Assembly (NCBI GenBank): GCA_002269645.1
Contig: NIVC01003490.1
Coordinates: 31,104-95,103 of the forward strand
DNA from: Macrostomum lignano
Lineage: Eukaryota
DNA length: 64,000 nt
Direction of reading: 5' to 3'
The position numbers were made by a program, and so were the translations under genes. Positions 270 to 64,000 of the stretch are shown piece by piece. Position 1 is the stretch's first letter. Each line of letters starts with the position of its first letter. A model generated the notes under the pieces. That model searched no databases, was not told where the DNA came from, and saw only the letters and a program-made list of their open reading frames with translations.

Positions 270-10337
<10,068 letters not shown>

Positions 10338-22100: not shown

Positions 22101-22564
22101 CGTGGGTGTTCAACCTGGTGCCCTGGCTGGTCACCGTGCCCTCCGCCCTGATGTCGGGCCTGACAGCCGATGCGTTGATTCGCCGCGGGATCAGCGTGAC
22201 CGCTACTCGCAAAATTATCGTTAGCGTCACCCTGCTTGGCTGCGCCTTCTTCCTGCTGCTCATGCCCTACTGCAGCGGCTATGTGGCCTCCCTATCCTGC
22301 ATGGCTGCCGCTGTCGCTTTCTCCGGCTTTCACAATAGCGGCGTCCAATTAAATCCGACAGATCTGGCGCCAGACTGCGGCGGCGCCGTGTTTGGCATTA
22401 TGAATATGGCCGGCGCTCTGCCTGGCTTTCTTGGCGTCTACCTGGTTGGCTTCTTGCTGGAGTGGACCAAATCCTGGTCGGCTGTGTTCCAGCAGACCGC
22501 TGTGGTGTGCATTGTTGGCTGGCTGGTGTACCTGCTGTTCGGTTCGGGCAGGAGAATCATCTGA
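16124..22564 (+). CDS. SLC17A9: Vesicular nucleotide transporter (MFS, SLC17 family), 4 exons, ~509 aa
   Basis: Exons 16124-16558, 18213-18457, 20957-21030, 21789-22564; GT-AG, phases 0/2/1 consistent, total 1530 nt. Motifs match recalled SLC17A9: QWSYAE, WNKKETGAALGVFFWGY..TQFLGGYLAD, GGERV, VPWSRLFRAPPFWA, YILLSWLPTYFHDTFP, WVFNLVPWLV, DLAPDCGGAVFGIMN. The start could be a downstream ATG (16133 or 16154). Confidence 0.92.
16590..18140. repeat. 83-bp minisatellite with strictly alternating A/B variants (166-bp dimer), SLC17A9 intron 1
   Basis: A-unit starts at 16842, 17008, 17174 (period 166). A and B share a 43-bp constant part TAAAGTGCCTCGTCATCTAAACTGCTACTATAATTAGACAAAT. Confidence 0.96.
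19138..19410 (+). mobile_element. tRNA-derived SINE with CORE-like central domain, SLC17A9 intron 2
   Basis: A-box-like TAGCCTAGTGGTCAGAGCG, B-box-like GGTTCGATTTCC, then GTGTCCTTAAGCAAGACACTTAGCTC...CAGCTGTAAAATGGG, resembling the CORE/MIR consensus GGCAAGTCACTTAACC...CTGTAAAATGGG. Confidence 0.75.
20225..20430. repeat. ~79-bp tandem duplication (~2.5 copies), SLC17A9 intron 2
   Basis: CCTTACTGCTCTCTCATTGGCTGA(A/G)CTAG occurs three times at about 79-bp spacing. Confidence 0.85.
21118..21742. repeat. 21-bp tandem repeat (ATGGGGATCAGCACTGTTAGG), SLC17A9 intron 3
   Basis: About 29 copies. Confidence 0.96.
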
Positions 22565-26434: not shown

Positions 26435-27069
26435 TCAGGGCGGAGGCGGGGCCGGCTTGTTGCCGTACCGCAGCCGCTCGAATCCGGCGGGCAGGTCGGG
26501 CAGCCGGGCTCCGCCACCTCCGTGCCCGCCGAAGCCTCCGCCGTTGCCGTCCAATTCGGCATCGTCGGGCATGCGAGCTGGCGGCTTCTCCTCCGGCAGC
26601 ACCAACGGCCCGCCGCCGCCGTCACCGTCAGCCGACACTCTGGAGGAGCCCGACGTCATCGCCGCCGTCCCTGACGCCGGTGGCCAGAGTCGGTTGTCGT
26701 CCAGCTCTTCAGCAAATATCACCGGCACGTGTTTCTTCGTCACAAGGGTGTCGTGCAAATAGGGATCGTAATCCTCGTCGCCGGCCTCTCGACGCCTCTG
26801 GCGCCTGCTGCTGGAGCGCCTGTACAGACAGCAGACAATGACCAGGGCGGCGAATAGAAACAGCACGATAGCCAGCAGGGACAGCACCAGGGCCAGGAAG
26901 AAGTCCGCATTATCGGCTGCGGCCACGACGGCGGTCCCGGGTGCTGCGGACGAGCCGAGCGGGGTGGCGCCGCCACGGGCGATGGCCTCCTCGCTGGCCT
27001 CGGCAGGCATTGGGCAGCGCTGGACCGAGTTAATTGCGGGCGGAGCGGAGCTGTAGCAGAGACCGGCCA
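26435..27069 (-). CDS. Dystroglycan (beta-DG)-like single-pass membrane protein, terminal exon or stand-alone short ORF
   Basis: Hydrophobic helix [27 protein letters not shown] followed by a basic stop-transfer [29 protein letters not shown] and [10 protein letters not shown] match the recalled dystroglycan tail (TFIKKGVPIIFADELDD; PLILQEEKAP). Acceptor CCCAG at 27070; in-frame ATG at 27010 (191 aa). No upstream coding exons found nearby. Confidence 0.75.
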
Positions 27070-27344
27070 CTGGGCAGCGGGTGAATTATTGGGAGACAGG
27101 CTGTGAGAACCTGCAGCATCATCACTATGAAAGTCCGGATCCCCGATTCTTAATCTAAATCCTACATCCCAATCCTAGAACCGAAATCTTGAAAATATCC
27201 CAAAGTAGAGAGTCCCGATTCCATGGTTTTAGTTTCTCACTCCCATAGTCTGGATTAATTACCTTGATCTTTAATCCCACAACCTACATAGATTCTCAAA
27301 CCATAGTCAAGAGCCTCAGTCCTACTAAGCAGATCCCCAGCCCG

Positions 27345-28318: not shown

Positions 28319-41737
<13,419 letters not shown>

Positions 41738-43036: not shown

Positions 43037-43408
43037 TCACTGAGCCTTAGGCGTGCCCAAACCGTACTTGGCTTTGATTCTGTCAATCTCTTCTCGCTTG
43101 GTCTCTACGCTGACCTTCTTCTGCACCTTTGTTGGCTGATAATAAAGCACAACCAGGTAGCGATTGCACACATTGAAGCCAGACAGGTGATCGCACGCGT
43201 TCTTAGCGTCGAATATGTCCTCGTAAACAACAAAAGCAGTGCCCCGAGTCTCTGGCGTGTTGCCAACCCGAATCTGCCTGATCGCGCCGTACTTGCCAAA
43301 GATGTCGTACATCTCCTCGGCGCTGATGCTGAATGGCAGATTTTTTACTAGCAGAATGCGGTTCACCTCCGGGGGCAGGCGGACGTTGAGTCGCTTGGAC
43401 AGGGCCAT
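43037..43408 (-). CDS. SF3B6: Splicing factor 3B subunit 6 (p14), 123 aa, intronless CDS
   Basis: [26 protein letters not shown]...[60 protein letters not shown] is nearly identical to recalled human SF3B6. An acceptor-like CCCCTGTTTAAG lies just upstream of the ATG. Confidence 0.97.
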
Positions 43409-46400
43409 GCTGGGCTGCTTGCTTAAACAGGGGCAACAGCGATGAGGATAACAAGCAGCAGGATAGAATTTTGGCATATTATATTATTTTCATTCCTTAC
43501 TAATAACATCGATCTAAAAGACAAACTGGAATATCAATTATTAGCTCATACTATCCATGATTCCATATCTTATATCTATCCATGTCTCATACCTCAAGAC
43601 AATTTCAAGATACCTTTAACTTTGCTTCCACAAGTCATCTTTAGGACATCACATTAAAGACTAGAAATTTACATAAAATATTGTTCCTACTGCCAGTAGA
43701 AATTTGCACATACAAATTTACCCAGGCATCAAATTGAAGAAAAAAGAAAAAGCTGCAACTTTTTTTGACACATTTCCCTTAATTTTGCTGTATTATATTC
43801 TGTGTTCTTTTTTCTTTTTTCAATTCTTTTTTATGATCTTCTACGCATTCTGGTCCTAAGACCTTTCTAAGAATTTTAAAAGCACAAAGCTTTTTATATA
43901 AGCAAAAAGAATCAAACAAAATATAAAAAAATACTAAAATATCTTTCAAAGTCTCATCGGTCCAAAGTCTTTATCATAAGATTGTAATAATTTATAGATT
44001 AATTAATAGACTATAATATTTACTAAATCTATCTCTTTAGCCACCAATGAATTTTATTAGTGTTCAGGCCAACCTAGGCATTGAAACTTCCTAGGTTGAG
44101 CCAATCCCAATTACTTGGCTTGCAAGCAATTAATCAACAGCATATTTCCCATCAAATGATAGACAATAAGACAACTCTAACAGTATTGCATTAATCAAGT
44201 TTCTGTCACTGCTGATTGGATTGGATACCCTGTAATTATGAAGTCCAGCATTTTCTAGTTGCATGAAAATGCAAAGAAAAAGTGCCTAGATTATATAAAA
44301 AAATCTATTTGACATAGACAAAAATCTTGATATAGAATATATACTATCTTGCAAGCAGAAGTGTTATCTAAATAAATTTATTTATATAACTTTCCTAGAA
44401 TCAAATACAAATAAGCTACAGCATAAGAATAGTCACCCTTTCAATAGTAAAGAGAGCAATAGCTTTGACTTTGATAGAGATAATGGGATCAATGATAGTG
44501 ACCACCACCTTTCATCTCTAAGCATACCATTTATTGCTCCTCAATCTGGCAAGCCAATACCCATAATTCCTATTAGAGCCAGATCATGACTATAATCAAA
44601 TTTGATTGAGTCTAAGAAAAAGCAATATTTCTGCAATAACAATATATCATTCTTAATGCCTAGTGCAATCTAAGAGCCATTACTTAGCAGCTTCTAGGTG
44701 TTATAAAACTTGAATTTCTTAGACCAAAAGACAACTAAAATGCTTATTGTAGTAAGTATAGCATCAACAATAGCAAGTCTTCTAGGTTCTAGTTCAACTT
44801 TTAGTCAGCAGTATTCTAGAGTTTCAAGAACTAAACTCATTCTTAAAACTTACTTTTCTACTAGCCTAGGTCTATATTTCATGCATTTTCATTCTTTAAA
44901 CATGCTCAATATTCATTATAGCTATAATGCCATAAAGATCTTTTAAAATTTACCAATTGGTGGCTAAATAGACAGCAATAGACCTAAAATAATTTGGGTT
45001 TTATATGTGATGCCCCAGTCTATACTTTTATGAAAAGTGTGATTGGGCATGGCAAATAGCTACCATATGAATTCTATATACTACTGAGGCTGACTATTTC
45101 AATGATGATATCAAATATAGATATCTATCATTTATATATATAGTAATGCTTATTAATGCTTAAAATCCCACCCTTTGTCACAAAGTTGTTAATGGTGCTA
45201 AATGTTTTGACTATGAAACTTCTACAGATACCAAGTTGTTATAGGTCTTATACTACTTCTGTTTCTATAATCTCACGATTGGCATAAATCTATTCGACAT
45301 ATTTTTGTTCTATATTGCAAAATGCTACCAAGTTAGTATAGGCCTAGCTCTAATTATTCTTGCCTAAGAAATTTTATTGTTAATACTTATTTCTACTTGA
45401 CTTTCTTAGAAAGTCCACAGTAGTGGTTAGTACCTAAGTAGTAAGACACTATGTTCTAATTTGAGTCCTAAAAGTAATGGCATTTCCCAGGGACCAAGGG
45501 TGTCTAGCTGTAGGTTTCTAGTTAGTTCATACTTCCTTTTTACTTTTGTGCCTATTACCTAGGCATAATTCTATTTGAGCTTGTACAGCTTCTTAATATT
45601 TCTATTCCTAGACCTTTATGACCTTGGTAATTCCCTATTCCAAATTCATATTCTGGGCCTTAACAACCTTGGTAACTCCCTATTACCTAAAATAAATAAA
45701 ATTCTAAAGCTTGAATTTTAAAAATCAATTGACTGCCTAACTAGCAGGGTTGGGAATAGTTATAATTTGAGCTTTTCTAGTTAGTTACTTAGTTAATGAC
45801 AGCTAAATAATAAAAAATAACCTCACAACAAATATAATAAATACTTTATAAAACATTTTATCTTTCTAATATCTATTATGTTAATTAGGTCCTAGGCATA
45901 TATCCTTAACTTTGAAAAATCAATTTAATTTAATTGCAAGCATTTGCTGTATAGAGATGCCCTACATAACAGTTTTGTCTGTGGATTGCTCTAGGCAATC
46001 AGTCATCAGCTTGATAGGACTTTTTGCGTTATATTGGATGTTTGTTGTCATGTAGGGCATCTCTGACATTCTGACAAGAATTAAAGCATTTCAATGAAGA
46101 TTTCAAGAAATTGGGCTACTTTTCCATAGACAAACTTCACTCATTTTTTTACTTAAATTTACCATAGGCTTAGTATAGACACTTTTTTTTCTTACCAATA
46201 ATAAAGCAAACTTTTTTCTAATCAGGCTATATTTGCACTGACAAATTTCACTTACTTAGACAAATTTGAAGTCACATTCTCTAAAAATTTACTATGGGCC
46301 TAGCCTACCTCGACACTCATTCTCTTCCCCTTGAATGCTATATAGTTTTGCATATGCTGGCAAACAATTTGAACTCACTTTTGATGAATCCAAAGTTAAA

Positions 46401-50706: not shown

Positions 50707-53208
50707 ATGGCGTCGGCAAGCACCTGCGGCAGGCAGCATGCTCCAATGGGCACGCCAACCAGCGATGGATTCGAACCCAAGCAGCCTGACTTAGAGAAGA
50801 AAAAGGTTGTCATCGACTACTCACCTGGTCCGGATTCCATTAGCAAAGTGATGCGGAAGCGAACCCTGTCGATGATGGAACTCCTAGGTGACAATTTTGA
50901 CGGCAAAGAAGCTCGGTCTACGGATTTTCCTAAGTTTTCTGCATCCAGCAGAGGATTTTCAATTGAAAAGCACTCATGCAAACCGCCTGTAGCATCGAAA
51001 CCTGATATTAACCGTGAGGCTAAGCAGGTGGAAGATCGCAAAAGTGCAAAAAGATCGCAGTGCGGCATGCGCCAGGAAGATGACGTCCAACCGGATCAGC
51101 AGTTTTCCATACAGCAGTCCGACCACCGATGCCGCAGAGTGGCGCCCGGACAAGAATGCAAGCCTAAGCCAAAGACGAAGCCTTGCACATTTCCGCAACT
51201 ATCGTTAGCACTGTTCCCAATGCCTATGCCTATGGACGATATGCAACAAGTTCGACAACCAAAAAGTGGTAAGCGAGCAGATCAAACCACCATACACAGT
51301 GCTTCCACACGGTTCCCACAATTTGAGGATAGCAAAGGTAAGAAGAAACTTCGGGTTTCCTTCGCTCAAGAAGCTGAAGAAGACATCACAGCAATGTACA
51401 CGCGATGTGATCCGAAATGGCAGGAGAGACTAGCCAACGAAACAGCCAAAAAGGGGCGAAAAACAGCTGCAAAAGAAAACCAAAGCCGAGAACAGATCAA
51501 TCCAGACATTGGTAAGATGCCAAACTACACTGAGCAGTCGGGGAAACACCAGACGGTGCAACAAAAGCAGCCAAGTGTCAAAATTCAGCAGGAAACAAAG
51601 CGTAACATCACGGAAACGCAACTGAATGAGCTCCAAAGGTGCGTAGGCATGTATGATGATGGCAACTATCCTCAGGAAACAAACGCTGAACCAGAACTAC
51701 CGGAAGCACCCCAGTATAGAACTCCAAAAAAATACCGCGGTTCATGCTGGGACATGTACCAGCAAGAAAGTCCGGGAGGCAGCAAGGAAAGTGAGCAAAT
51801 GGAGCAGCTGCAATGTACAGAAAGTTCTCTGGGCGATGAGAAGCAGCAAAGTGGAAGCGAGACGCTTCAGGATGCTGAACGACTGCATCAGTGTAACGGC
51901 AAAATTTACAGCGAATATAATCGTGTAGAATTTGAGGCAAATAGGGATGAAGAAGACGAAGACGACACCGAGTCCAGAAAGCCTATAGGGAACGAAAATT
52001 TCGAAAAACAAGCAACCGATAAACAAAGACCTGGCTCAAGTGTTCTAGCAGAACTTGAAGTTAGTCGAATGGAACCAATCCCTATCCAGCAAACAAAGCG
52101 CGTTAGTCAGGACTACACGCTTCAAATTGGTGTAAGAAATTCCACTACAGGAGAGAGTTTTGCAGAAAACCAGCAAAGCACGACAAGAGACCAAGCTGTC
52201 GACAAGACACGTATTCAAGCCAGTCAAGAAGACCAACAGCAGCGAGTTCGGAGATGTAATTCTCAACATAGACCACAAGCACTGGCAAATCAAAAGTCAG
52301 TTCAACGACAGAGTCGCGCTGAAAAGCCACCTTGCATTGGCTTCCAACGGACTGGAGGATTAAATCAGCATCGGCGCAGCGAGAGCGAACCGAGTATGCA
52401 GCGAGACCGTCGGATTTCTCCGTCCGGTCAGCGGCCTGAACGAAGTGACGCACTCAGACAAAATACCTGGAAACGTGACGACAACAAAGTCGACCCGCCG
52501 CCTCAAACAGTAACCAAGTGCTTGGAGCAAACGGTGCAGCAACGACCAAAAGAATCGACAGATATTTTAGATGCATGCAATGAAGCTCTTCGACAAGACT
52601 CCGAGCGCAAAAGAAGGCGAGAGCAAGCGGAAAGAGCCCAGGAGATCGCTTTACTAGAAGCTCTAAAGCCGAAGCGCAAAGCTGCCCCGGAGCAAAACCA
52701 GCCAGCAACGACCTGCCCCAAGGTTGAATGCCATTGCTCGCTGCACTCGGAGCAGACCTGTAAAGGACCAGCTAAGAAGCGGCCAGTGGCCAAGCCAATA
52801 GCAGATTCTGACTGCAATAAACAAACAAAAGAGAGCACTAGCGACAGAATCAATCCGGAATCCGCCTGCTCAGAGGACGCAGGCAAAGTGGAATGGGTTC
52901 GAGAGGGCCACCTCCTCGTGAAGCTCAACAACGGCAAGCCGAGCGGTGCAAAGGTTGTGAGCAAAGGTAGCCTCTCCGACGACATATACAGTAGCGGCGA
53001 TCAGCCGGTAAAGGCGGAGTCCAGTGAGGCAACGACGCCGGAACAGAAAACGCTAGAAGAAGAGACAATGGAAGATTCATCAATGGTGGAGACTGTTCCT
53101 CAGCCTCCTCGAAACGATTTGCTGTGGGGCGCCGGCGAGGGCGAAAATACATTAGAGACCACTGATGATGACCCAGTCGCGGGATCTAAAAAGAAGTGCT
53201 GCTGCTGA
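50707..53208 (+). CDS. Uncharacterised intronless 833-aa Q/E/K/S-rich, probably disordered protein
   Basis: A 2.5-kb non-repetitive ORF with a good start context (AAAATGG), in AT-rich flanks. Contains KKKLRVSF and ends SKKKCCC*. No family recognised. Confidence 0.8.
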   Translation: MASASTCGRQHAPMGTPTSDGFEPKQPDLEKKKVVIDYSPGPDSISKVMRKRTLSMMELLGDNFDGKEARSTDFPKFSASSRGFSIEKHSCKPPVASKPDINREAKQVEDRKSAKRSQCGMRQEDDVQPDQQFSIQQSDHRCRRVAPGQECKPKPKTKPCTFPQLSLALFPMPMPMDDMQQVRQPKSGKRADQTTIHSASTRFPQFEDSKGKKKLRVSFAQEAEEDITAMYTRCDPKWQERLANETAKKGRKTAAKENQSREQINPDIGKMPNYTEQSGKHQTVQQKQPSVKIQQETKRNITETQLNELQRCVGMYDDGNYPQETNAEPELPEAPQYRTPKKYRGSCWDMYQQESPGGSKESEQMEQLQCTESSLGDEKQQSGSETLQDAERLHQCNGKIYSEYNRVEFEANRDEEDEDDTESRKPIGNENFEKQATDKQRPGSSVLAELEVSRMEPIPIQQTKRVSQDYTLQIGVRNSTTGESFAENQQSTTRDQAVDKTRIQASQEDQQQRVRRCNSQHRPQALANQKSVQRQSRAEKPPCIGFQRTGGLNQHRRSESEPSMQRDRRISPSGQRPERSDALRQNTWKRDDNKVDPPPQTVTKCLEQTVQQRPKESTDILDACNEALRQDSERKRRREQAERAQEIALLEALKPKRKAAPEQNQPATTCPKVECHCSLHSEQTCKGPAKKRPVAKPIADSDCNKQTKESTSDRINPESACSEDAGKVEWVREGHLLVKLNNGKPSGAKVVSKGSLSDDIYSSGDQPVKAESSEATTPEQKTLEEETMEDSSMVETVPQPPRNDLLWGAGEGENTLETTDDDPVAGSKKKCCC

Positions 53209-53906: not shown

Positions 53907-55090
53907 ATTAAAATTTTGTAAATGGTACGATTAAATCAACGATAATTTTTTTGTTTTACTATACTGAATATAATTTTGAAAACATACTTTCTGGTCTGAT
54001 GAAACCTGAACTGAAGGGCTGTATAAAATCGATGAAACGGAGAATCAGCTCCTACAATCTACGAGCGTGGCACTCAACGTTGCTGTGCTAGCTTGCCCGT
54101 TATTTTCGAATATTTGGCTTCTTCTACCAGTCATTAGTCATTTGCTGCCCCGCTGGCCAAATCTCTAAATCTGACTATATCCGACGAATCTTCTCCTGCT
54201 CTCAAGGTTCCTTTCGCCAGGCAAAGAGAGTAGAGAAAATGATCTATAAAAACAATTATATTCTTCTTTTATTAGCCGGCACAACTCTCCAGTTGCATTC
54301 CCCTTTCTCAGCGCATTCTCAAAACGGAGTATGAAAAAACCAATCGATCTGAAGTCTCTTGGTTCCAGTCACAGTGCTTGAGTGCAATTCCATTGTCTAT
54401 TTCAGTAATAAATTTAGAACAGTTTCACTCGGAGAGATGGCAGATTAAAAAAACCATTCATACATATTTGATACGGTGCTTAAAAGTACAAATCGGATGA
54501 AGCCGCTTCGCAGAGATTCGATTTTTCGGTGCATAGGTTGAGCCTATTGACAAACATCGTATACAGTCATGCAGATACATTTATACATAGAATTAACCTA
54601 CAGTTAGATATACCTTTAAATTATTATATGCACTTGTAATTGGCTAGTACAGTAACATTCAAAGCCCCACTCAATTATAGGTTTGGTTGCACCAAGGCAA
54701 TGCAAATTGGTTTCATGATTTAACACGCTTTGAAACAAGATGAAACACGTTTTGAGAGAAAGAAAAAGAAAAAATAGCAAAAAGTCATCTACTATTAATT
54801 ATGGAACACCTGCTGACCAATGCTGACCACTGCAAACAGGTAACACAAAGAAAGCAAGATAAATTGCATTGCCAGGTAGGTATCGATTTTTGATTCAACG
54901 GGATGCAATTTTGAAGGAGGGGCCATGACTGACAGAGGTGACGCTGGGCTTTCATGACAACCAGACGGGACGCTCCTTAGCTACAATTCTTGACTTGATT
55001 AGCCCAGTTATTGTCTCTTGACTGCCGTGAGAATCGCGGGCGCCGCCTCTTCCTCGTCGATGCTATCCTTTGCGGAGCACCGACTCAACT

Positions 55091-58000
55091 TCAATGGCGC
55101 GCGCTTCTGCTTCGGCTGCTGATGTCGAAGGCCACGCTCGCTCTCGTGCGGCGCAGCAGTCCGCAGGCCGGTGGCTTCAGGAACTGGTTGAACAGGGCGC
55201 TACTTCTCTCGTCAATGCTGTAGTCGCGACGTAGCCGGTGGCGGCGGGCCTCAGACGAGGCTGCGGATCCGCTGCCGCCGCTACCGGATAGGGAGGCTGC
55301 TGACGCGGAGACTTGGGATCTGCAGGGTTTGAGATCGAGGCTAAGCGATGAGGACGAGATTAGGGTATCCGCGGATGTTGTAGATTAAAGCATCAGTACT
55401 TTATGCTAGTAGCTTGAAAGGTCCGCACAGCGGAGTTGAGCTGTCTCATGGAGCTATTAGCTTTGAACGCTGTTTGGAGGAACTATAAATGCTTCAGATG
55501 TGAAAAATAAATCCAGATAACTTCGAGCAGAGTTATATTAGGATACATTTCTGTACAGTGTTAACAAGGGGAGGCTCCCACAATTAATCCAGATTCGATT
55601 CTGTTCGGAGACTCATCGATTTGCTACTGTGTTGTAATAATTAACATTACACGCTCGTAAACAGGTGAATGGCGTGTGCGATTCACGCCAATGACAGCCA
55701 ACGCCATAGGCGCAGACATGCCTGACGATGAGAAAATACATGCTGTTTGTTTGCCTGCTTACGTGTCCGCGTGCGTGCCTAAGGCGGGTCAGTGGACCAG
55801 CGAACTGCTTTCCACCTCTCTGGCAACCTGACAGTGCTCAAAACTGATAAACTAATACTAATATACGAGATACATGCAGCTGCAGCGTTAGCAAGTGGGT
55901 CTTCAAAATTTTGTTTGATAAAATCGATTGCTGCGTCCTGATACAACGATAGCTTCTCGGGAGTACCGTAGTGTTTGGGTTGTCTCCGTGCGAAATAGCT
56001 ATTCAAACGGATGATGCTTTGGCGTAAAATTAATGGGTTGTAACTACAAATTCAAGCGCTTTTTGTGCTAAACTTTGAAGTACGCTCGTAAGTTAACCAG
56101 ACTCATAAGAGCATCTATTTAGACGAGAGCTTCAACGCGCAGGGTCAGCTGCTGAAGATCGAGCTCAGGAGAGCGAATCATGATCAAGAACAGTTTATCA
56201 TGCTGTTGGGCAGCCATCATAGGTGAAGATTGAACAATTCCAAGTGCATATAATAGTGGACACTTGTCACTATCATATACCATTATAGAGCATTACAAAA
56301 GTTTCTGTAAGGAATAAGGTAGTGAAAGTTTTTTTTAAAAACGCTTGAAACTTTTGTTACCATTAACCGTAGTTCCCTAAGAAAAGACCCCAAGTGGGTG
56401 ACGTACAGTGGCAAAGCTGTAACGCTGTAACCCTCTAATTAAATTTTACATCTCCTGTAAACTGACTAAGCTGTTAATGAAACGCTCGGTACCTTCTCTA
56501 TTTGTACAAGTTTATTACGCCTTATTTCGCCTGGCCTCGTTTAATCCAGGGCAAGTACGAGCTCGAAAAAGATTTGTTACGCACCTGAGAAACCTAGCAA
56601 CCAGGGGATTCTCGTGGCAGCCGTAGAAGACGCCACTGAAGCTTTCTTCCGGACCAAATGCTTCATCGCTTCCGTCGCCTTCGCAGGTTTCGTCCTCGAA
56701 GACGCCGTCGCCATCGGTCGCCGACGCTTGAAGACAACTGCGACGCTCAACACTGCGGTAGCCGGAATCCCGCTGCAGCAGGCGGAGCTGGCCACGCTTC
56801 GCTGAAGAGACGCAGTCACTGACGTCCTCTGCTATCTCGATGCTGTCCTTACTGTCCTCGGCTTCATCCTCATCGTCGTCGAGCTCGTCCTCGAAGCTGG
56901 AGCGCAGTCGCCAGAGGTCGCGCGGCTCGACTATAGTCAGCCTCGCCTTGTCGGAGTTGTCGCTGGTGTTAATGACGATCTCAGTCAGTGAATTCGGTGT
57001 CGCTTTGTTGCCTTGTTGGGCTGTCACTTCCGGGGGATTTTTTGGTCTGGTGGTTTCCGGTGTGGGTACGTGTGCTTCGTGTGAGGCCTGGGTTTGACCC
57101 CATCTGCGGAGGGCAGATTTTTATCAACTGTAATACGAGCTAAACGCTTGCAATTACAAAAAGTGGCAAGCGGAACAAGGCCATAAGATAAATTGTGCAG
57201 AACTCACTCACTTCTTTGTGAAATTAATTTTGTGCTGGCAGACGGGCGCTTGCGGTAAAGTTGATACAGTAATAACAGCGGAGGCTGAAATGGATGAAAA
57301 ATTAATATGAATAGGTAGGTATGCTTTTGTCATGACATTTTCTAGAGTTAAGCCTTACTTGGTTGAAAACTTAAAAAGATTGTAAAAATCGATTCAACAC
57401 GTAATCGGCTGGCCCTTTTTGGTTAGTCGTATGGTTGGTTATGTAATAAAAATACCCTACAAGGTCATATTCATAGGGAAAGGTTTGCGGTAATGACAAT
57501 AAAACTTATTGGGTAGTAGAGGAAAGCAGAATTATTTTAGAATTCGCTGGAATCAGCTACAGACAGCAAGCATGAGTGGTAGTGCAAGCACATTTATTCG
57601 CCGCTGACTCAATTAAATTCGACAGCTCGACTAGACTATATAACCAAGATAGATTATCCCGTGATGAGATTTGTAGACGGCATATTCCATTCCCGCAGTC
57701 AGACAGCACCATAATTGCACCCGACAGCCGAAATGGTAAATCGCTATATTTTAGCAAGGGGGAAATTTCAAACTGCAAATACCGGTTCCGCACTAGCGAT
57801 TTTTCGAACTACTATCGGATCCAGGAGACGAATTATTCAAATGATCTGGGACCGTATAAATCGAACTGAATTTTTCATCTGATTTCCGATTCCAGCCACC
57901 GTATAAGCTCTCTAATAAATGAAAATAGTCCTAAATACACCATAAAAATGAAATGTCATTAAAATTGAATCGGTTTCAAAATGTAGCTTTTTGTAGACGG

Positions 58001-60344
58001 CTCACTAAACACCCCCTGTGTAGATCAGATGTAACTATGGGCCGTATGCAGAAAGCTCTGTCTAGGGTAGTCCGGTATTGAAAAGCTAGTCTAGACTTGG
58101 ATTTGGTATGCAGAAACGCAAAGTTAGACCGGTCTTCTATAGCAGAACTAGGCTAGCTAGACCATAGACCATAGACTGAACTACCCAAGCCCGGACTAGC
58201 TAGTCTGGACTAGGCTTTCTGCATACGGCCCTATGTAACTACCGCTCTATTGTAACGGACGCTACTGGTGCTACAAGCGTACGCATTTGACAATTAAAGA
58301 ATACCAACGACAAGACCGGGTACAAGTACTTTCAAAATTATGCAGCTGATAACTACCTTAACGATTGTGCTTTTGTGCGCCTCGGAAAACTCTAATTGCG
58401 ACTAAGAAGCGCTAGCTTTTAAAGCGTCTCAACAACGCGGCACTTAAGTATGTACTAACTATAACAAAAAGGACATCCGTGTTAACTTAGATTCTGAGTG
58501 TTTTGCCTCAGGAAGCCGATCAAGGCTAAAAAATCAGGCAAGGATAAAAGCTGCTCTAGCTATAGTTAAAGAGGCTGGTTTGCCCAGCAAAAGCAGTTAT
58601 TGTTTATGCCAAGAAAAGCGTGGAAAGAACTTTGCATTTGCCTCTACGTGTGTATGCGGGTACATTGACGGAAAATAGCCAGTAACAACACTGAAAATAC
58701 GTAACGCTGGGTGTTCTAAATGGATCGATCTGCGATGGCGTTTCTATACTTTTAATTGTTCGAATGACGCAGTACAGAGAGTCAACAAACAGCACCATAT
58801 ACGAGTGTAGCTTCACTATACCACTTGAATGAATGTATCGATCACGATGGTCTCTGCATTACTCTATCAGTCTCTCTTTCATTGCACTCCGCAATTATTT
58901 GCGGACTATTGTGATGACTCTCGATCTGGAAGGTGAAATCAACGATCAGACCATAATAAGCAAAACTTTATAGGGATGAAAACCACAAAATATTCGGTAT
59001 TGCATGGCGCAAACTGTTAAATCGAAGCTGTTTCAAAGCAGCTTACGAGCAAGTATATTCTGTTTGCATTCACCGATTGACACATTTACGAGCATGCCAA
59101 TTACATTCTCGGAAAAATGTACTTCAAGTCACTGAGTGGGGCTCATTTTTCACACACCGAATCTATTATTTTAGAAATTCTCAACATAATTTCCAGTCAA
59201 ATTCCCATTAATCCTCCGGTAGAATCACGCATCGAAGCACTCCCTAAGGATTGTTTTTTCCCAATCGGTGCAGCTCATTCCGCAGAGCATCGACAAGCTC
59301 CTCCTTTTTAAAGTCAAAGATCCTCCGCTTAAATTTCTCCTTCATTCTGAAGAATAGAAGGAAACAGAAAAGCGCCAGGTCAAGGGCAGCAGAGCATGGT
59401 GACTGTTGAAACGCCTATTTTATTCTTTGACTTTGAGAGCTAGAGAGCCCATCAGCAGCTCCAGAAACAACTGTGGTAAGCACACCGTACTGTACCATTC
59501 AGCCGGCACAGTCGCCACCTGATTGAGCACAACGGGCAAAAGGAAAGTTTGCCAATGTTTGAAGCATCCTTTGCGAAACTTGATTGAAGCATCCTCGGCA
59601 TCGCTGACCCATTGACGGCTCTGCTGTTTAGCCTCAGGGTCATAGTAGTACCCAAGTTTCGCCACCTGTGGAAATTTAATCCACCAAGTTCGATTGCCCT
59701 CCATTGAACTTGGCAAGCATGAACTGGGCGAACTCGAAATTCACTCTGCATTTGGCTGATGTAGCACCCAGCTAAGATTTTTGTGTAGGATCTTAATAAC
59801 TGTTGAGTCCTACACCCCAAAAAGGTGCTATAGTCAAAGAATTTCCATACGCTGATCTATGCCCTGTACTTTCCGCACAGCTTTAGCCACTACGGTGCAT
59901 CATAACGTTGGGACGATTGCGGAGACTTCAACTTGATGGCTTTGGTTGAAATTTGATCAATGCCACACAATGCGACGAAGACTATCGCACATAATACTAG
60001 CATATAATTAAATCTTTAGAAATGCAAGAACTTTATTTGGATCGAAAATTTGATTCCATAATTAGTGCCCATAGCCCTGAGGCAGCCATCGTCTTGAAAC
60101 TGAAGACATGCAACGCTTGAAAGTTCATTTAGATAAAAGTACACCGCACGCATGCACAGACTTACCACCGGCCTCTTGTTGATTGCTGAATGATTCGATC
60201 AGAGTCGAATTGCCGACGCCACCGACCAGGTCTACTGCACTCGGCGGCTCGCGCTGCGGGCCCTGCAGCTCGGCCTCTTCGGCTTTCCTCTCCTCTCTCG
60301 GACTGTCCGTCAGGCCGCACTCCTCTTCTTCAATAAGCGATTGG
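55091..60344 (-). CDS. CBARP: CBARP/BARP-like protein (voltage-gated Ca channel beta-subunit-associated regulatory protein), 3' exons only
   Basis: Phase-compatible exons 60344-60166, 57284-57212, 57103-56585, 55340-55091 (stop TGA). Three ordered motifs match recalled human CBARP: RDLWRLRSSFE (YRDLWSLRASLE), RLLQRDSGYRSVE (RLLQMDSGYASIE), RRDYSIDERSSALFNQFL (RRDYSIDEKTDALFHEFL). The 5' exons, including the TM segment, were not found. Confidence 0.75.
58039..58231. mobile_element. PIF/Harbinger-like MITE
   Basis: TIR GGGCCGTATGCAGAAAGC / GCTTTCTGCATACGGCCC with a 3-bp TAT TSD. Confidence 0.85.
59420..59830 (-). pseudogene. Decayed mariner transposase fragment
   Basis: YYYDPEAKQQSRQWV and TVPAEWYSTVCLPQLF resemble mariner segments after the first catalytic Asp; frameshifted. 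Confidence 0.65.
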
Positions 60345-61048
60345 CTGGGAAAACAGAATTTTTCCGTCTGATTAGCAGCTATTACTTTTAGGAGATCGAA
60401 TCTGCTTTTTGGCGTCGGTAATAATGCCTACTTACTTGAACCGCCCCATCTGTATATTAATTTCTATATACGCTCGCATGGATGGACGGATATTTGAAAT
60501 AAGTGCACGGCCAGCAGTGGGAGACTCAACAGTGGAGTACAAGCTATAGGCTGCAGAAGCAGCAATTAATTCCTCCCTAAAGGCAAAAAATTTGTCTCGC
60601 TTAGCTAACTCCCCTGCCGAAGCCCGCCGGCCGCTGTAATTAAAGAGAAAGGCAAAGCAGGAAAGAAGAGAGCGGGAAAAAGAGAAAGTGAGGACGAGTT
60701 ACTGAGCCGCCGAATTTGTCAGCTTTTCTCACTCTCGCAGGTCGGACTCGCGCGAAAGGGAGCAGGATTTAGGGGGGAGAGTGGCAGGTATTTACAAATT
60801 ACGGGCACGCTGGGCTTGGCACCTGGCGCTGGCCTGGCCTAGACAACTCGGCACGCTCGGCAAGATTTATCTCCTGATGAAATGCAACACAAAGCCGACA
60901 AAAATAGTTCGGAAATTGTTTTGGATGTTTTATTTTAGGGATCTTTACAGCAACATATTTACCTGAGGCAAGCTGAGACAAAGTTAGTTGTCGGCCAATC
61001 TTCAGCCAGTGCATCCACGTGGATGTACAACAAGAGTAACTTAGAAGC

Positions 61049-61263
61049 CGCTACACTCGCAATTCGTGCGATTGTCTTTTGAACAAAATACAATCTGTCT
61101 TTTGCTTGTTGCCATATCTCTAATGATGCTTTTTTTGAAGATTTACAGACAGCTGAGATATTGTTAATTTTCTGGTGAACAAAAACATTTCTATCCTGTT
61201 TAAGCATTTTCAGCCAAAACTGGCCTTTCAGTTAAAAAAAATTCACGACTTGCGAGTGTAGCG
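61049..61263. mobile_element. Small MITE-like inverted-repeat element
   Basis: CGCTACACTCGCAATTCGTG versus CACGACTTGCGAGTGTAGCG (20 bp, 1 mismatch). Confidence 0.6.
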
Positions 61264-61309
61264 AATTCCTACTTCAATGGTTCATGGTATGCCCGCCTGT
61301 AGTTCTGCA

Positions 61310-61985
61310 CAAGTACCCATCTCCCCAAGTACCCATCTCCCCAAGTACCCATCTCCCCAAGTACCCATCTCCCCAAGTACCCATCTCCCAAGTACCATCT
61401 CCCCAAGTACCCATCTCCCCAAGTACCCATCTCCCCAAGTACCCATCTCCCCAAGTACCATCTCCCCAAGTACCCATCTCCCCAAGTACCCATCTCCCCA
61501 AGTACCCATCTCCCCAAGTACCCATCTCCCCAAGTACCCATCTCCCCAAGTACCCATCTCCCCAAGTACCCATCTCCCCAAGTACCCATCTCCCCAAGTA
61601 CCCATCTCCCCAAGTACCCATCTCCCCAAGTACCCATCTCCCCAAGTACCCATCTCCCCAAGTACCCATCTCCCCAAGTACCCATCTCCCCAAGTACCCA
61701 TCTCCCCAAGTACCCATCTCCCAAGTACCCATCTCCCCAAGTACCCATCTCCCCAAGTACCCATCTCCCCAAGTACCCATCTCCCAAGTACCCATCTCCC
61801 CAAGTACCCATCTCCCCAAGTACCCATCTCCCCAAGTACCCATCTCCCCAAGTACCCATCTCCCCAAGTACCCATCTCCCCAAGTACCCATCTCCCCAAG
61901 TACCCATCTCCCCAAGTACCCATCTCCCCAAGTACCCATCTCCCCAAGTACCCATCTCCCCAAGTACCCATCTCCCCAAGTACCC
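61310..61985. repeat. 16-bp tandem repeat (GTACCCATCTCCCCAA)
   Basis: About 42 copies with occasional 1-bp deletions. Confidence 0.97.
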
Positions 61986-64000
61986 AGCTGCTCCGATCTG
62001 TAAGCAGCAATTGTCTCTGCATAGTGTAGGACTGATAACCCCCTCTCCATGAACTTGAATGCTTAAAAGCCTATTTTTAGGGTTTCAGAAGAAAACGCAA
62101 TGATGCGATTTGACAAGTCTGTCTGGTAGCAAATTGACGCGTCAGCCGCCCATTGTATTGCAGCAGCAGGTTTGCCAGCTCTTTGCATCCGTCATCCTGA
62201 GAGCCCCCGACTGTTCCCATCAACTCGGTTCTGCAAACGTACTCATTTTGACAGTAGTAAAGAATATTCCTCAAGGCACGCAAGTGGGACGTTTTCATGC
62301 CAGGAAAAATTTTGACAGATAGGAGCAGAGACGCGGCAAGGGCGGGTCGAGGCGGGGCATCAGCTGCTGCAGAAATTCAGGTACAGCGCGAGGCTCCCCG
62401 CGCCTCATTTCCTGATTCATTCGTGTTGAAAAAGCAACCTCAGACCGTTCTCTACTCAGTTTCCACCCTTGAGTACCGGCCTTTCCCTCGGCTGCCATTC
62501 TCTTTGTTCTTTTTCTTTATAGACACAAAATCAAGCCAGAGCATCAGTAGCGCGCTAACAACCTATCCTTTCTTTCTCGGACTGCTAAGACTGACCGAAC
62601 AGCTCAGTCAGACGGAAACATCACATTTTGCATTCATTATACTAGACTGTACAATCTTCAGGTACTCATGTGAAACACCCAGTCGATTCTGTTTGAGCCT
62701 GATGTCTCATCCAATTCATTGATCTAATCCCAATTACAAGCCGTGCATGGCTGCTCCTCTTCATGTCAGCAACATCCGTGATCTTCTATCCTATTATTTT
62801 CAGCTAGCAGCAGAGTGGGGTTGTTTTATTTAAATAAATTTTCAAAAAGCAAGTATTGCGTCGCATCATTTCGAGCGCTACCATCAGTAAAAGTATCTGA
62901 GAACGGACGAACTAACCAGCTGCAGTAGGTATTGGAGAGCTAAAATTCTAACAAGATTACAGTAGACATCAAATTGTCAGTTTTACTGTGCATATTTTCT
63001 GTTCTGTAGCTTGTATTGATTAGCCTTCCAGCCAAAATGAGAAGGCGTTTTACGGCTGGATAGCAATAAACTAAGGGCTCGGAGCTACGAAATTCCTTCC
63101 TAATGCGTCGTCTTAATTTCTACGGCGGGCTTCTACCCTGATAACTGGCAGGGTTCCTTCAAAGCCAAGGAAAAGGAAGCAACGAGAGAGAGGAGAAGGA
63201 AAACTATGGGAAATCTTCCCCTTAACTGGGCTGCGACAGATGGCCGACGTTCTTAGTTAAGCCTCGTCATCCTCGCAGAGTTGGGGCAACGGAGGGGAAC
63301 GTAAAAAATCAGCATCTATCTCTCATGTGGCCTGTAAAAGTTAATTAACAACAGGAACCTGGGACCGATTTTTCCAGTTCAAGGAAACCTTGCAGGCGGG
63401 AGTTTTCTATTTTCAACTTCGAAAACTCCCAGCTAGTAGGTCAGTTGCATCAGTTCCGCGACTCTCTGAACGCACTTGCGTGCCCGAACTCTAGCTGGTA
63501 AACAGTCAATACGAGTTTGGAAAGTTCATCTTACATGGGAAACTCAATTTTCATTGATGCTAACCACATTCAATGCCTCTTAAACTGTATTTATAAACTT
63601 TGCTACCCTTCAATTCTCTTAGAGTCTTAGAGGTCCCACAGTGTTCAGCTAGCTGCGAAGGCGTAATCAATACAGCTGTAACATTAAAATGTAAAAGTTC
63701 ATACACTTCCTTGACAGTTTTCATTTCCTTCTCAAAACGTGTCTGCGCACCTTACCTACACTCGTAGCTATCCTAACTGCTTGAACTTTCGTATTGATCC
63801 AGCTACCCCATGACTTCCTTTTAAGTGTAACTATGCTCCTTGTTTCACCTTTTCTGTCTTTCTCTCTTCCATTCATCAATGCTAATCTTTTTTAAAAAAA
63901 ACGTGACCTAATATTAAAGATCAGGTGCCTTTCTGGCTCGTACACTTGGAAATCATACAGTTCTTTATCAGGTACTCTGATTGAAGTTGATTTTTGAAAC

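What the first reader, a model, noticed from the sequence alone, without database searches (positions are those of the whole stretch)
55091..60344. Invertebrate homolog of CBARP/BARP detected by three short linear motifs
Seen: in an otherwise low-complexity protein, three motifs occur in the same order as in human CBARP (RDLW.LR.S.E; RLLQ.DSGY.S.E; RRDYSIDE...ALF..FL), and the last is in an exon absent from the ORF track. Known: BARP binds CaV-beta subunits and downregulates voltage-gated Ca channels; I know it mainly from mammals. Inference: the regulatory mechanism may be pan-bilaterian, and these motifs probably mark the functional core.
Basis: partly seen in the sequence, partly recalled or inferred. 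Interest (0 to 1): 0.7.

Follow-up and report, generated by a model that had tools for sequence, protein, structure and literature searches.

The report
Flatworm homolog of calcium-channel regulator BARP
This stretch of the flatworm Macrostomum lignano genome encodes most of a divergent relative of the vertebrate membrane protein CBARP/BARP, and it keeps exactly the residues that mouse BARP needs to bind calcium-channel beta subunits, so this regulatory link is probably much older than vertebrates.

Summary
On the minus strand, three motifs (PRDLWRLRSSFEDE, LRLLQRDSGYRSVERR, RRDYSIDERSSALFNQFL) lie in two exons, in the same order as in real mammalian CBARP sequences.

The window is Macrostomum lignano. 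Four GT-AG exons (60344-60166, 57284-57212, 57103-56585, 55319-55091) splice into one open frame.

The transmembrane exon lies about 2.5 kb beyond base 64000, as shown by a 94-98% identical sister contig and a 490-aa model.

A mammalian CBARP HMM picks exactly the two motif exons as the top hits among 1854 six-frame ORFs (E 1e-5 and 1e-3). No shuffle out of 6000 reaches the real score.

All seven residues shown by mutagenesis to be needed for CaV-beta binding in mouse (L-W-x-x-R; LF-x-x-FL) are conserved. They sit in the only two helices AlphaFold predicts.

Pfam's own CBARP profile gives only a faint hit, and whole-database single-sequence searches find nothing.

Public names for this protein (TSSC4, FAM189B) are unsupported.

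The window copy lacks one G, which frameshifts a C-terminal tail that other copies keep.

One metagenome contig with non-vertebrate-like CpG content carries the same three motifs.

"Pan-bilaterian" and actual CaV-beta binding remain untested.

The parts
60166..60344 (-). Exon X (179 nt): cytosolic acidic linker QSLIEEEECGLTDSPREERKAEE...NQQEAG. It is the first exon of the gene that lies inside the window.
   Evidence: Acceptor CTGTTTTCCCAG| and donor |GTAAGT. Matches aa 131-193 of the 490-aa M. lignano model P0124. Phase fits exon W.
57212..57284 (-). Exon W (73 nt): ASAVITVSTLPQAPVCQHKINFTK(K).
   Evidence: Acceptor CATCCATTTCAG| and donor |GTGAGT. Present in P0124 and P0123. X+W+Y+Z gives a single open frame.
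56585..57103 (-). Exon Y (519 nt): disordered region carrying motif 1 (domain I-like, PRDLWRLRSSFEDE, 56925-56884; LWRLR at 56916-56902) and motif 2 (LRLLQRDSGYRSVERR, 56787-56740; DSGYRS at 56769-56752).
   Evidence: Acceptor TGCCCTCCGCAG| and donor |GTGCGT. Mammalian CBARP HMM E 9.7e-4 among 1854 window ORFs. BLASTP HSP to rat CBARP 2e-5. AlphaFold helix 91-114 of P0001 covers motif 1.
55091..55319 (-). Exon Z as read in this copy (229 nt including the TGA stop): Ser/Gly-rich linker, then motif 3 (domain II-like, RRDYSIDERSSALFNQFL, 55231-55178; LFNQFL at 55195-55178), then the frameshifted tail TRASVAFDISSRSRSARH*.
   Evidence: Acceptor CAAACCCTGCAG|, and phase AG+A = Arg with exon Y. Best window hit of the CBARP HMM, E 1.1e-5. 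hhalign 96.4%. AlphaFold helix 251-261 of P0001.
55149..55150 (-). Site of a 1-nt deletion relative to the sister copy: one G is missing in CTGCGCC^GCACGAG.
   Evidence: Alignment of the window with L001 shows the exon is otherwise 100% identical. All five database models that reach the C-terminus continue with the HESERG... tail.
55008..55148 (-). Alternative (+1) frame that encodes the tail found in all other copies: HESERGLRHQQPKQKRAPLKLSRCSAKDSIDEEEAAPAILTAVKRQ*, with stop TAA at 55010-55008. In this window it is out of frame.
   Evidence: Translation. The tail aligns with the mammal-invariant blocks QRGRQHSDP and RAPLRRGDSVD. The statistics are weak: shuffle p about 0.02.
59423..59740 (-). 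Open frame resembling a mariner transposase, inside intron X-W. It is not part of the coding sequence. This is my reading, not a profile hit.
   Evidence: Its translation contains YYDPEAKQQSRQWV, which recalls mariner transposases. No Pfam hit.
61310..61986 (.). 16-bp tandem repeat (42.6 copies) in the intron upstream of exon X. It explains the long repetitive ORFs seen there in all frames.
   Evidence: Tandem Repeats Finder.

Best explanation
Window 55008-60344 (minus strand) holds the last four exons of a Macrostomum lignano gene. The gene encodes a single-pass membrane protein with a long disordered cytosolic tail, and it is a divergent homolog, probably the ortholog, of vertebrate CBARP/BARP. 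The first three exons, including the transmembrane exon (PWLMVLFLAGGVLGGVLMVVGVLLVCKFCF), lie 15 nt to about 3.7 kb beyond base 64000.

Shown here: the exon structure, the homology signal, and conservation of the residues that mouse BARP needs for CaV-beta binding.

Inferred: the flatworm protein works like BARP. The membrane anchor would hold a disordered tail whose two short helices capture the cytosolic CaV-beta subunit. Helix 1 (RDLWRLRSSF, the L-W-x-x-R motif) would occupy the pocket of CaV-beta that normally holds the alpha1 subunit's AID helix. Helix 2 (ALFNQFL, the LF-x-x-FL motif, preceded by RRDYSIDE) would bind a second site. Together they would pull CaV-beta off or away from CaV-alpha1 and damp voltage-gated Ca2+ channel activity.

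Motif 2 (LLQxDSGYxSxE) is equally conserved but has no known role. It fits the DSGxxS phosphodegron pattern and may control turnover; this is speculation.

The copy in this window has a 1-nt deletion that replaces the last 46 residues. This is either an assembly error or a variant paralog.
For: Organism and gene:
- 100% and 92% identical M. lignano proteins P0001 and P0002.
- Sister contig NIVC01003617.1 (L001) is 94-98.5% identical.

Splicing:
- Four exons with consensus acceptors and donors and compatible phases give one open frame.
- The same junctions occur in database models P0123 and P0124.

Homology:
- BLASTP to rat CBARP gives two colinear HSPs, 2e-5 and 5e-5.
- The mammalian CBARP HMM ranks the two motif exons first and second of 1854 window ORFs.
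- The spliced peptide scores 26.4 bits against shuffles of mean -2.7, max 11.6, with 0 of 6000 reaching it.
- P0124 scores 32.9 bits, p 1.5e-12, and the TM/CKxC, motif 1, motif 2 and motif 3 matches are colinear.
- hhalign gives 96.4%.
- A block query scores mammalian CBARPs at 29-35 bits, E 0.007-0.5 even when scaled to 5.8e9 sequences.
- Pfam PF27937 (CBARP) is the only family on record for the product, though the hit is marked faint.

Functional residues:
- Mouse L426, W427, R430 and L545, F546, F549, L550 are required for CaV-beta binding (PMC4003244).
- These map to rat 428/429/432 and 547/548/551/552, and all seven are identical in the flatworm (LWRLR, LFNQFL).

Structure:
- AlphaFold predicts a disordered chain with only two helices, at motif 1 and at ALFNQFL. 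The paper likewise models domain I as a helix.

Mammalian conservation:
- The three motifs are among the roughly ten most invariant blocks in mammals.

Third lineage:
- Metagenome contig L002 has the same three motifs in order.
Against: - The similarity is confined to about 60 residues in short blocks, and the remaining roughly 85% of the protein cannot be aligned.
- Whole-database single-sequence searches do not reach significance: phmmer finds only the protein's own M. lignano paralog at E<=0.001, and one search found no hit from any other species at E<=0.01.
- The curated Pfam CBARP profile gives only a 'faint' hit.
- Several blocks invariant in mammals (GRRVSFNEAALFEQ, GRRYTLTEGDFHHLKNARL..., ASLDGASPYFKVKKWKL) have no counterpart.
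- The N-terminal ectodomain is much shorter than in mammals and has no N-glycosylation sequon in the available models.
- My profile was built from mammals only.
- No binding, expression or phenotype data exist for the flatworm protein.
- This window's copy is frameshifted after motif 3.
Confidence: 0.75

Rival explanations
1. True homolog, but the conserved motifs serve another or an additional job rather than CaV-beta inhibition. One candidate is acting as an accessory or chaperone protein for nicotinic receptors, as mammalian BARP does for alpha6-containing receptors. Another is a general membrane scaffold whose motifs bind other partners.
For: BARP is used as a required accessory protein for functional alpha6beta4 nAChR expression (PMC11965388). 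BARP knockout mice did not show the phenotype expected of a simple CaV inhibitor (review PMC12992490). Motif 2 is as conserved as motifs 1 and 3 but lies outside both CaV-beta-binding domains.
Against: The residues conserved across flatworm, L002 and mammals are exactly those mapped by mutagenesis as CaV-beta contacts. No other partner has been mapped to these motifs in the papers read here.
Confidence: 0.15
2. The copy in this window is a non-functional or decaying paralog. The missing G at 55149/55150 would be real and would remove a conserved C-terminal tail.
For: There is a 1-nt deletion relative to L001 in an otherwise identical exon. All five database models that reach the C-terminus keep the long tail. 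That tail aligns with two mammal-invariant blocks. The window and L001 differ by 1.5-6% elsewhere, so they are distinct copies.
Against: All four exons are otherwise open and all splice sites are intact. All three motifs lie upstream of the frameshift. A single-base indel in a GG run is a typical long-read assembly error. Statistical support for tail conservation is weak (p about 0.02).
Confidence: 0.2
3. There is no common ancestry. Three short linear motifs arose convergently, or match by chance, in an unrelated disordered protein.
For: Short linear motifs do evolve convergently. Most of the protein is unalignable, and whole-database searches are not significant. The Pfam hit is faint.
Against: Four elements (TM-CKxC and motifs 1, 2 and 3) occur in the same order. 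The conserved flanks go well beyond what a binding motif needs (RRDYSIDE, LLQxDSGYxSxE). There is a possible fifth and sixth block in the tail. Shuffle controls give 0 of 6000. A third lineage (L002) is intermediate in sequence, with ERSNALFNEFLRHDP.
Confidence: 0.07
4. The protein is what public databases call it: TSSC4, FAM189B, or a protein-kinase-domain protein.
For: These are the UniRef names attached to P0001/P0125, P0126/P0127 and P0124.
Against: Three unrelated names are attached to near-identical products of one gene. Pfam finds no family at all, at E up to 10, in P0001 or P0002. PDB sequences give no relevant match. I did not scan the 490-aa model itself against Pfam; all of its residues are accounted for by the seven exons of this gene.
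Confidence: 0.01

Closest known systems
Vertebrate CBARP / BARP (C19orf26, Dos; Pfam PF27937 'CBARP'); mouse protein characterised by Beguin et al. 2014 (PMC4003244)
   Same: - N-terminal single transmembrane helix followed by CK(R/F)C(W/F), then a long disordered cytosolic tail.
- The same order of domain I motif (D-L-W-x-L-R-x-S-x-E), LLQxDSGYxSxE, and domain II motif (RRDYSIDExxxALFxxFL).
- All seven mutagenesis-defined CaV-beta-binding residues are identical.
- Possibly also the RGxxHxxP, RAPL and DS[IV]D blocks of the tail.
   Different: - About 490 aa against about 700 aa.
- Less than 15% of positions can be aligned.
- Very short ectodomain without an N-glycosylation sequon.
- The mammal-invariant juxtamembrane and central blocks are absent.
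- The Pfam profile hit is only faint.
- Spacing between motifs differs: 50 and 93 aa, against 71 and 39 aa in rat.
- No functional data.
AID (alpha-interaction domain) helix of CaV-alpha1 I-II loop
   Same: It works alike, by inference. It is a short amphipathic helix with an essential Trp that docks in the CaV-beta AID-binding pocket, and BARP domain I competes with it.
   Different: There is no sequence relationship. The paper models BARP domain I in the reverse orientation. AID is part of the channel itself, not of a separate membrane anchor.
RGK GTPases (Rad, Rem, Gem/Kir)
   Same: They are CaV-beta-binding negative regulators of voltage-gated Ca2+ channels. The review says their mechanism appeared early in evolution (PMC12992490).
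   Different: They are folded small GTPases that bind the CaV-beta nucleotide-kinase domain. They have no TM anchor and no sequence similarity.
Metagenome contig Ga0056116_1004781 (L002), 943-aa open frame
   Same: It carries the same three motifs in the same order (ELWSLRAML; LRGDSGYKSLE; QRDYSIDERSNALFNEFLRHDP). Its motif 3 is 76% identical to the flatworm and 70% identical to rat.
   Different: The source organism is unknown. All motifs sit in one uninterrupted frame. Spacers are much longer. It has a C-terminal RIPVIQ like the mammalian AIPVIEEE. No TM exon was found on the 6.5-kb contig.

Membership tests
CBARP/BARP (Pfam PF27937) | Match to the curated family profile PF27937 | tested here: inconclusive
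   PF27937 is precomputed for P0001 and P0002 and for all 120 mammalian CBARPs listed. On the M. lignano product it is marked 'faint', meaning no single hit reaches E 0.001. The model is absent from the local Pfam copy. My own mammalian HMM gives 26.4-32.9 bits, p down to 1.5e-12 per sequence.
CBARP/BARP (Pfam PF27937) | CaV-beta-binding domain I: helix with essential L, W and R (mouse L426, W427, R430) | tested here: met
   The window encodes RDLWRLRSSFE at 56925-56884 with L, W and R in register. AlphaFold predicts a helix over it.
CBARP/BARP (Pfam PF27937) | CaV-beta-binding domain II: two Leu-Phe pairs LFxxFL (mouse L545, F546, F549, L550), preceded by RRDYSIDE | tested here: met
   RRDYSIDERSSALFNQFL at 55231-55178. 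BLASTP 5e-5. hhalign 96.4%. HMM E 1.1e-5 in the window.
CBARP/BARP (Pfam PF27937) | Invariant central motif LLQxDSGYxSxE between domains I and II | tested here: met
   LRLLQRDSGYRSVERR at 56787-56740, against mammalian LLQMDSGYASIEGR, which is invariant in 20 mammals.
CBARP/BARP (Pfam PF27937) | Single N-terminal transmembrane helix with N-out/C-in layout, followed by CKRCW | tested here: met
   This feature is not inside the window. In the sister copy L001 (exon 1306-1446) and in models P0124, P0126 and P0127 the sequence is PWLMVLFLAGGVLGGVLMVVGVLLVCKFCF. It aligns to HMM positions 47-80. Topology is inferred only.
CBARP/BARP (Pfam PF27937) | N-glycosylated ectodomain (mouse N25). This is a property of the mammalian protein and is not known to be family-defining. 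| tested here: inconclusive
   There is no N-x-S/T before the TM in P0124 or P0126, but the start codon is uncertain: there are two alternative acceptors and a possible internal ATG.
CBARP/BARP (Pfam PF27937) | Other mammal-invariant blocks (GRRVSFNEAALFEQ, GRRYTLTEGDFHHLKNARLTHLHLPP, ASLDGASPYFKVKKWKL, SLDTRGSPKRH). Whether they are conserved beyond mammals is unknown here. | tested here: not met
   The HMM alignment of P0124 covers only HMM positions 47-80 and 365-582. The blocks are listed. They may be vertebrate additions, and I had no non-mammalian vertebrate sequences.
CBARP/BARP (Pfam PF27937) | Reciprocal best match at whole-database scale | tested here: inconclusive
   Forward phmmer of P0001 against 1.84e9 representatives finds nothing but the protein's own M. 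lignano paralog at E<=0.001. Locally, a 109-aa block query scores mammalian CBARPs at E 0.007-0.5 when scaled to 5.77e9 sequences. The matching database search failed at the word-index step. The reverse search is clearly positive within the window.
CBARP/BARP (Pfam PF27937) | Physical binding to CaV-beta and suppression of CaV currents | not testable with these tools
   This needs pull-down or ITC and electrophysiology. No complex-prediction tool was available.
TSSC4 (name given by UniRef to P0001 and P0125) | Match to a TSSC4 family profile or to a TSSC4 sequence | tested here: not met
   No Pfam family of any kind at E up to 10. phmmer against PDB chains at E<=10 returns no chain named TSSC4. 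Sister models of the same gene are named FAM189B and protein kinase.

The most novel reading that the evidence does not exclude
The BARP-CaV-beta module predates vertebrates. It consists of a membrane anchor plus two helical CaV-beta-binding motifs and a DSGxxS-type motif. It would have been kept in at least Platyhelminthes and one further CpG-undepleted lineage purely as short linear motifs inside a freely evolving disordered tail. BARP, described in a 2026 review as 'not in a large family', would then be an ancient bilaterian regulator of calcium channels that standard homology searches and orthology tables miss.
Probability: 0.5. Interest if true: 0.6.

Novelty: new member of a known kind. 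Interest (0 to 1): 0.5.

Why it matters
BARP is the only known integral-membrane protein that captures CaV-beta subunits. It has been studied only in mammals, and none of the 79 papers in the library that mention CBARP or its full name uses a '-like' gene name for it. The 40 listed are vertebrate or biomedical studies.

A flatworm homolog has three consequences:
- It pushes the origin of this regulator back to before the protostome-deuterostome split.
- It gives an evolutionary filter that singles out about 60 residues as the functional parts of a 700-residue disordered protein. This includes a third motif, LLQxDSGYxSxE, that nobody has studied.
- It offers a tractable invertebrate for loss-of-function tests. 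To my knowledge RNAi and transgenesis are established in M. lignano.

It also corrects misleading public names (TSSC4, FAM189B). Finally, it shows how motif-only conservation escapes billion-sequence searches but is recovered by a targeted family profile.

Tried and rejected
- Local Pfam on the single exons and on P0001 and P0002 gave nothing. The CBARP model is newer than the local copy.
- The search for homologous proteins with the spliced peptide returned only two M. lignano proteins.
- Exhaustive phmmer against 1.84e9 representatives returned only the protein's own M. lignano paralog.
- The third and last database search, with a 109-aa block query that works well locally, met only 7 word-sharing candidates and returned nothing, not even P0001. 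I could therefore not survey other invertebrate phyla.
- A metagenome scan by protein alignment matched 28 pattern stretches, none confirmed. A stricter DNA pattern then found one contig, L002.
- Exact look-ups of P0001 and P0002 in assemblies found nothing on record. P0123 worked.
- PDB sequence search gave no relevant structure.
- A direct X-to-Y splice was rejected because the phases clash (1+1 bases). This is resolved by exon W.
- A hydropathy scan for a TM exon inside 57100-64000 found no convincing candidate, consistent with the TM exon lying outside the window.
- The TSSC4, FAM189B and kinase names were rejected.
- Literature searches for an invertebrate CBARP found none. The JCB paper has no supplementary text held.
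- The sample identity of Ga0056116 could not be found.

It matched database entries at 96-98% identity. All later analyses used database sequences only.

Full report
**1. What is in the sequence.**

The finding lies on the minus strand. Three-frame translation shows the following:
- PRDLWRLRSSFEDE and LRLLQRDSGYRSVERR in one open stretch (57120-56518).
- RRDYSIDERSSALFNQFL in a second open stretch in another frame (55384-55094). This stretch has no start codon, which is why it is missing from a start-to-stop ORF list.

Exact coordinates are 56925-56884, 56787-56740 and 55231-55178.

**2. Organism and gene model.**

The spliced peptide is 100% and 92% identical to two Macrostomum lignano proteins, so the window is flatworm DNA. 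Cluster members of these proteins include a 490-aa model, P0124, and an NCBI model, PAA50513.1.

The NCBI model led to contig NIVC01003617.1 (L001), a 94-98.5% identical sister copy of this locus. Mapping P0124 on both sequences gives seven exons.

Four of the exons are in the window:

| Exon | Coordinates | Acceptor | Donor |
|---|---|---|---|
| X | 60344-60166 | polypyrimidine-CAG | GTAAGT |
| W | 57284-57212 | polypyrimidine-CAG | GTGAGT |
| Y | 57103-56585 | polypyrimidine-CAG | GTGCGT |
| Z | 55319-55091 | polypyrimidine-CAG | (stop codon) |

The phases are compatible and joining the exons gives a single open frame of 332 codons. The 73-nt exon W was missed. Without it, X and Y are out of phase.

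The window ends at the position equivalent to L001 3924. The next exon upstream (L001 3784-3909) therefore starts only 15 nt outside the window. The transmembrane exon (L001 1306-1446...SVTPWLMVLFLAGGVLGGVLMVVGVLLVCKFCFNSQ...) lies about 2.5 kb outside, and a 5' exon lies about 3.6 kb outside.

The start codon is unsettled. Two acceptors 8 nt apart give the two N-termini seen in P0124/P0127 and in P0126. There is also an in-frame ATG just before the TM.

**3. Is it homologous to CBARP?**

745 proteins were found and the best 120 are all mammalian CBARP/Dos. They contain YRDLWSLRASLELH, RRLLQMDSGYASIEGR and RRDYSIDEKTDALFHEFL, in that order.

The tests gave these results:
- (a) BLASTP of P0001 against rat CBARP gives two colinear HSPs. 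One spans motifs 1 and 2 (2e-5) and one covers motif 3 (5e-5).
- (b) An HMM of 104 mammalian CBARPs searched against all 1854 six-frame ORFs of the 64-kb window ranks exon Z first (E 1.1e-5) and exon Y second (E 9.7e-4). Every other ORF has E>1.
- (c) The spliced window peptide scores 26.4 bits. 3000 global and 3000 local shuffles average -2.7 and reach at most 11.6.
- (d) Against the full-length P0124 the score is 32.9 bits (per-sequence p 1.5e-12). The TM/CKxC segment aligns to HMM 47-80, and one alignment runs through motifs 1, 2 and 3 (HMM 365-582).
- (e) hhalign of a 20-mammal profile against P0124 gives 96.4% probability on motif 3.
- (f) The three motifs are among about ten blocks that are at least 95% invariant across mammals.
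- (g) The precomputed Pfam family for the flatworm proteins is PF27937, the same one carried by every mammalian CBARP. The look-up tool names it CBARP but marks the flatworm hit 'faint', so on its own it is only a hint.

There are also points against. phmmer of P0001 against 1.84 billion representatives finds only the protein's own M. lignano paralog at E<=0.001, because each short block pays HMMER's local-alignment entry cost. A trimmed 109-aa block query raises mammalian CBARPs to 29-35 bits, which is E 0.007-0.5 even when scaled to 5.8e9 sequences. The corresponding database run failed at the word-index stage.

No other family competes. Pfam finds nothing and PDB finds nothing relevant.

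The UniRef names TSSC4, FAM189B and 'protein kinase domain-containing' are attached to near-identical products of this one gene. They have no support.

**4. Functional reading.**

Beguin et al. 2014 (PMC4003244) showed several things about mouse BARP:
- It is a 698-aa type I membrane glycoprotein with no known domain except one TM.
- It binds all CaV-beta isoforms through domain I (aa 422-442). This is a predicted helix that docks in the AID-binding pocket, and binding is lost when L426, W427 or R430 is mutated.
- It also binds through domain II (aa 525-563), where binding depends on L545-F546 and F549-L550.
- Binding displaces CaV-beta from CaV-alpha1 and lowers channel activity without changing surface expression.

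Rat numbering is shifted by +2, so these residues are the L, W and R of DLWSLR and the LF..FL of ALFHEFL. The flatworm has DLWRLR and ALFNQFL, and all seven residues are identical.

An AlphaFold model of P0001, using the flatworm-plus-mammal alignment, is disordered overall (mean pLDDT 50). It has just two helices, residues 91-114 and 251-261. These cover motif 1 and the ALFNQFL core of motif 3 and carry the highest local confidence.

I therefore infer that the protein is a membrane-anchored trap for CaV-beta that works like BARP. This step is inference: nothing here tests binding.

Motif 2 lies between the two mapped domains. Its DSGYxS core fits the DSGxxS phosphodegron pattern known for beta-TrCP substrates. 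That comparison is from my own knowledge and is untested.

**5. The frameshift.**

Exon Z is identical to L001 except that one G is missing between 55150 and 55149. In this window the frame therefore ends as ...LLRRTRASVAFDISSRSRSARH* at 55091.

L001 and all five database models that reach the C-terminus instead continue HESERGLRHQQPKQKRAPLKLSRCSAKDSIDEEEAAPAILTAVKRQ*. That reading would stop at 55010-55008 in the window.

In a full alignment this tail lines up with the mammal-invariant blocks QRGRQHSDP (RGxxHxxP), RAPLRRGDSVD (RAPL...DS[IV]D) and IEEE. The statistical support is weak: 0.9 bits and shuffle p about 0.02.

The long tail is therefore probably the native one. The window has either an assembly error in a GG run or a variant paralog. 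P0002 differs at the same codon (R to G), so the site is variable or error-prone.

**6. Beyond flatworm and mammals.**

The literature library has no paper describing an invertebrate CBARP. A 2026 review calls BARP 'not in a large family'.

A degenerate DNA pattern for RDYS[IV]DE-x3-ALF-x2-FL, scanned over JGI metagenome contigs, found exactly one contig (L002, 6.5 kb). It has a 943-codon open frame with ELWSLRAML, LRGDSGYKSLE and QRDYSIDERSNALFNEFLRHDP in the same order, and a C-terminal RIPVIQ that recalls the mammalian AIPVIEEE.

Its motif 3 is 76% identical to the flatworm and 70% identical to rat, and it mixes residues of both. Its CpG observed/expected ratio is 1.1-1.26, including 3 kb of non-coding DNA. 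That is unlike CpG-depleted vertebrate genomes, so it is probably a second non-vertebrate homolog. Its source organism is unknown.

This supports 'wider than vertebrates'. It does not establish 'pan-bilaterian'.

**7. Verdict.**

It is also supported for two of the three motifs being the functional core.
- The mechanism is inferred, and the phylogenetic breadth is open.
- The item is a new, previously mis-named, highly divergent member of a known family.
- It is of moderate interest to calcium-channel biology, and it is a clear example of motif-only conservation.

Noticed in passing
window 55149-55150 (minus strand), and 55008-55148: One G is missing relative to the sister contig L001. This frameshifts the last 46 codons. 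The lost tail, which all five database models that reach the C-terminus keep, aligns weakly with two mammal-invariant CBARP blocks (RGxxHxxP; RAPL...DS[IV]D). P0002 has an R-to-G change at the same codon.
   Followed up: yes
L002 (metagenome contig Ga0056116_1004781) 646-3474, minus strand: A 943-codon open frame carries the same three CBARP motifs in order plus a C-terminal RIPVIQ. CpG observed/expected is 1.1-1.26 across the contig, which is not vertebrate-like. The source organism is unknown, and no TM exon was found on the contig.
   Followed up: partly
database proteins P0001, P0124-P0127 (products of this gene or its paralogs): Near-identical products of one M. lignano gene carry three unrelated UniRef names: TSSC4, FAM189B and protein kinase domain-containing protein. 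None is supported by any profile hit.
   Followed up: yes
window 56769-56752 (DSGYRS within motif 2): The motif conserved between the two CaV-beta-binding domains has a DSGxxS core like the beta-TrCP phosphodegron. It is conserved in flatworm, L002 and mammals, and no function is reported in the papers read.
   Followed up: no
L001 1290-1330 (outside the window): Two alternative acceptors 8 nt apart in front of the TM exon give two different N-termini (P0124/P0127 against P0126). An in-frame ATG (MATQEGSVTPW...) sits just upstream. The true start codon is unresolved.
   Followed up: partly
window 36278-37324 (-) and 59423-59740 (-): There is an intact 348-aa Tc1/mariner-type transposase ORF (HTH plus DDE_3 domains). 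A second open frame that recalls a mariner transposase (YYDPEAKQQSRQWV), but has no Pfam hit, lies inside the X-W intron of the CBARP-like gene.
   Followed up: partly
window 61310-61986: A 16-bp tandem repeat (CAAGTACCCATCTCCC, 42.6 copies, 98% matches) lies in the intron upstream of exon X. It creates long spurious ORFs in all six frames.
   Followed up: yes
window 50707-53208 (+): An 833-aa uninterrupted ORF has no Pfam match. It is convergent with the CBARP-like gene and is also called as an 833-aa gene on the sister contig L001.
   Followed up: no
window 29400-32409 (-): RAD54-like SNF2 helicase exons (SNF2-rel_dom, Helicase_C, weak Rad54_N). One ORF runs on into a long repeat that translates as (SVCL)n. 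Similar repeats occur at about 8.6-9.2 kb and 25.9-26.4 kb.
   Followed up: partly
window 26435-27070 (-), 43037-43477 (-), 21779-22564 (+), 6658-7050 (-): Other neighbouring genes: a dystroglycan-like TM/cytoplasmic fragment (PF05454, E 7e-7), an RRM protein that I read as SF3B6/p14-like, an MFS transporter exon, and a MORN-repeat exon.
   Followed up: partly
tool behaviour: A 109-aa chimeric block query that detects mammalian CBARP locally met only 7 word-sharing candidates in the search for homologous proteins. It did not even recover the source protein.
   Followed up: no
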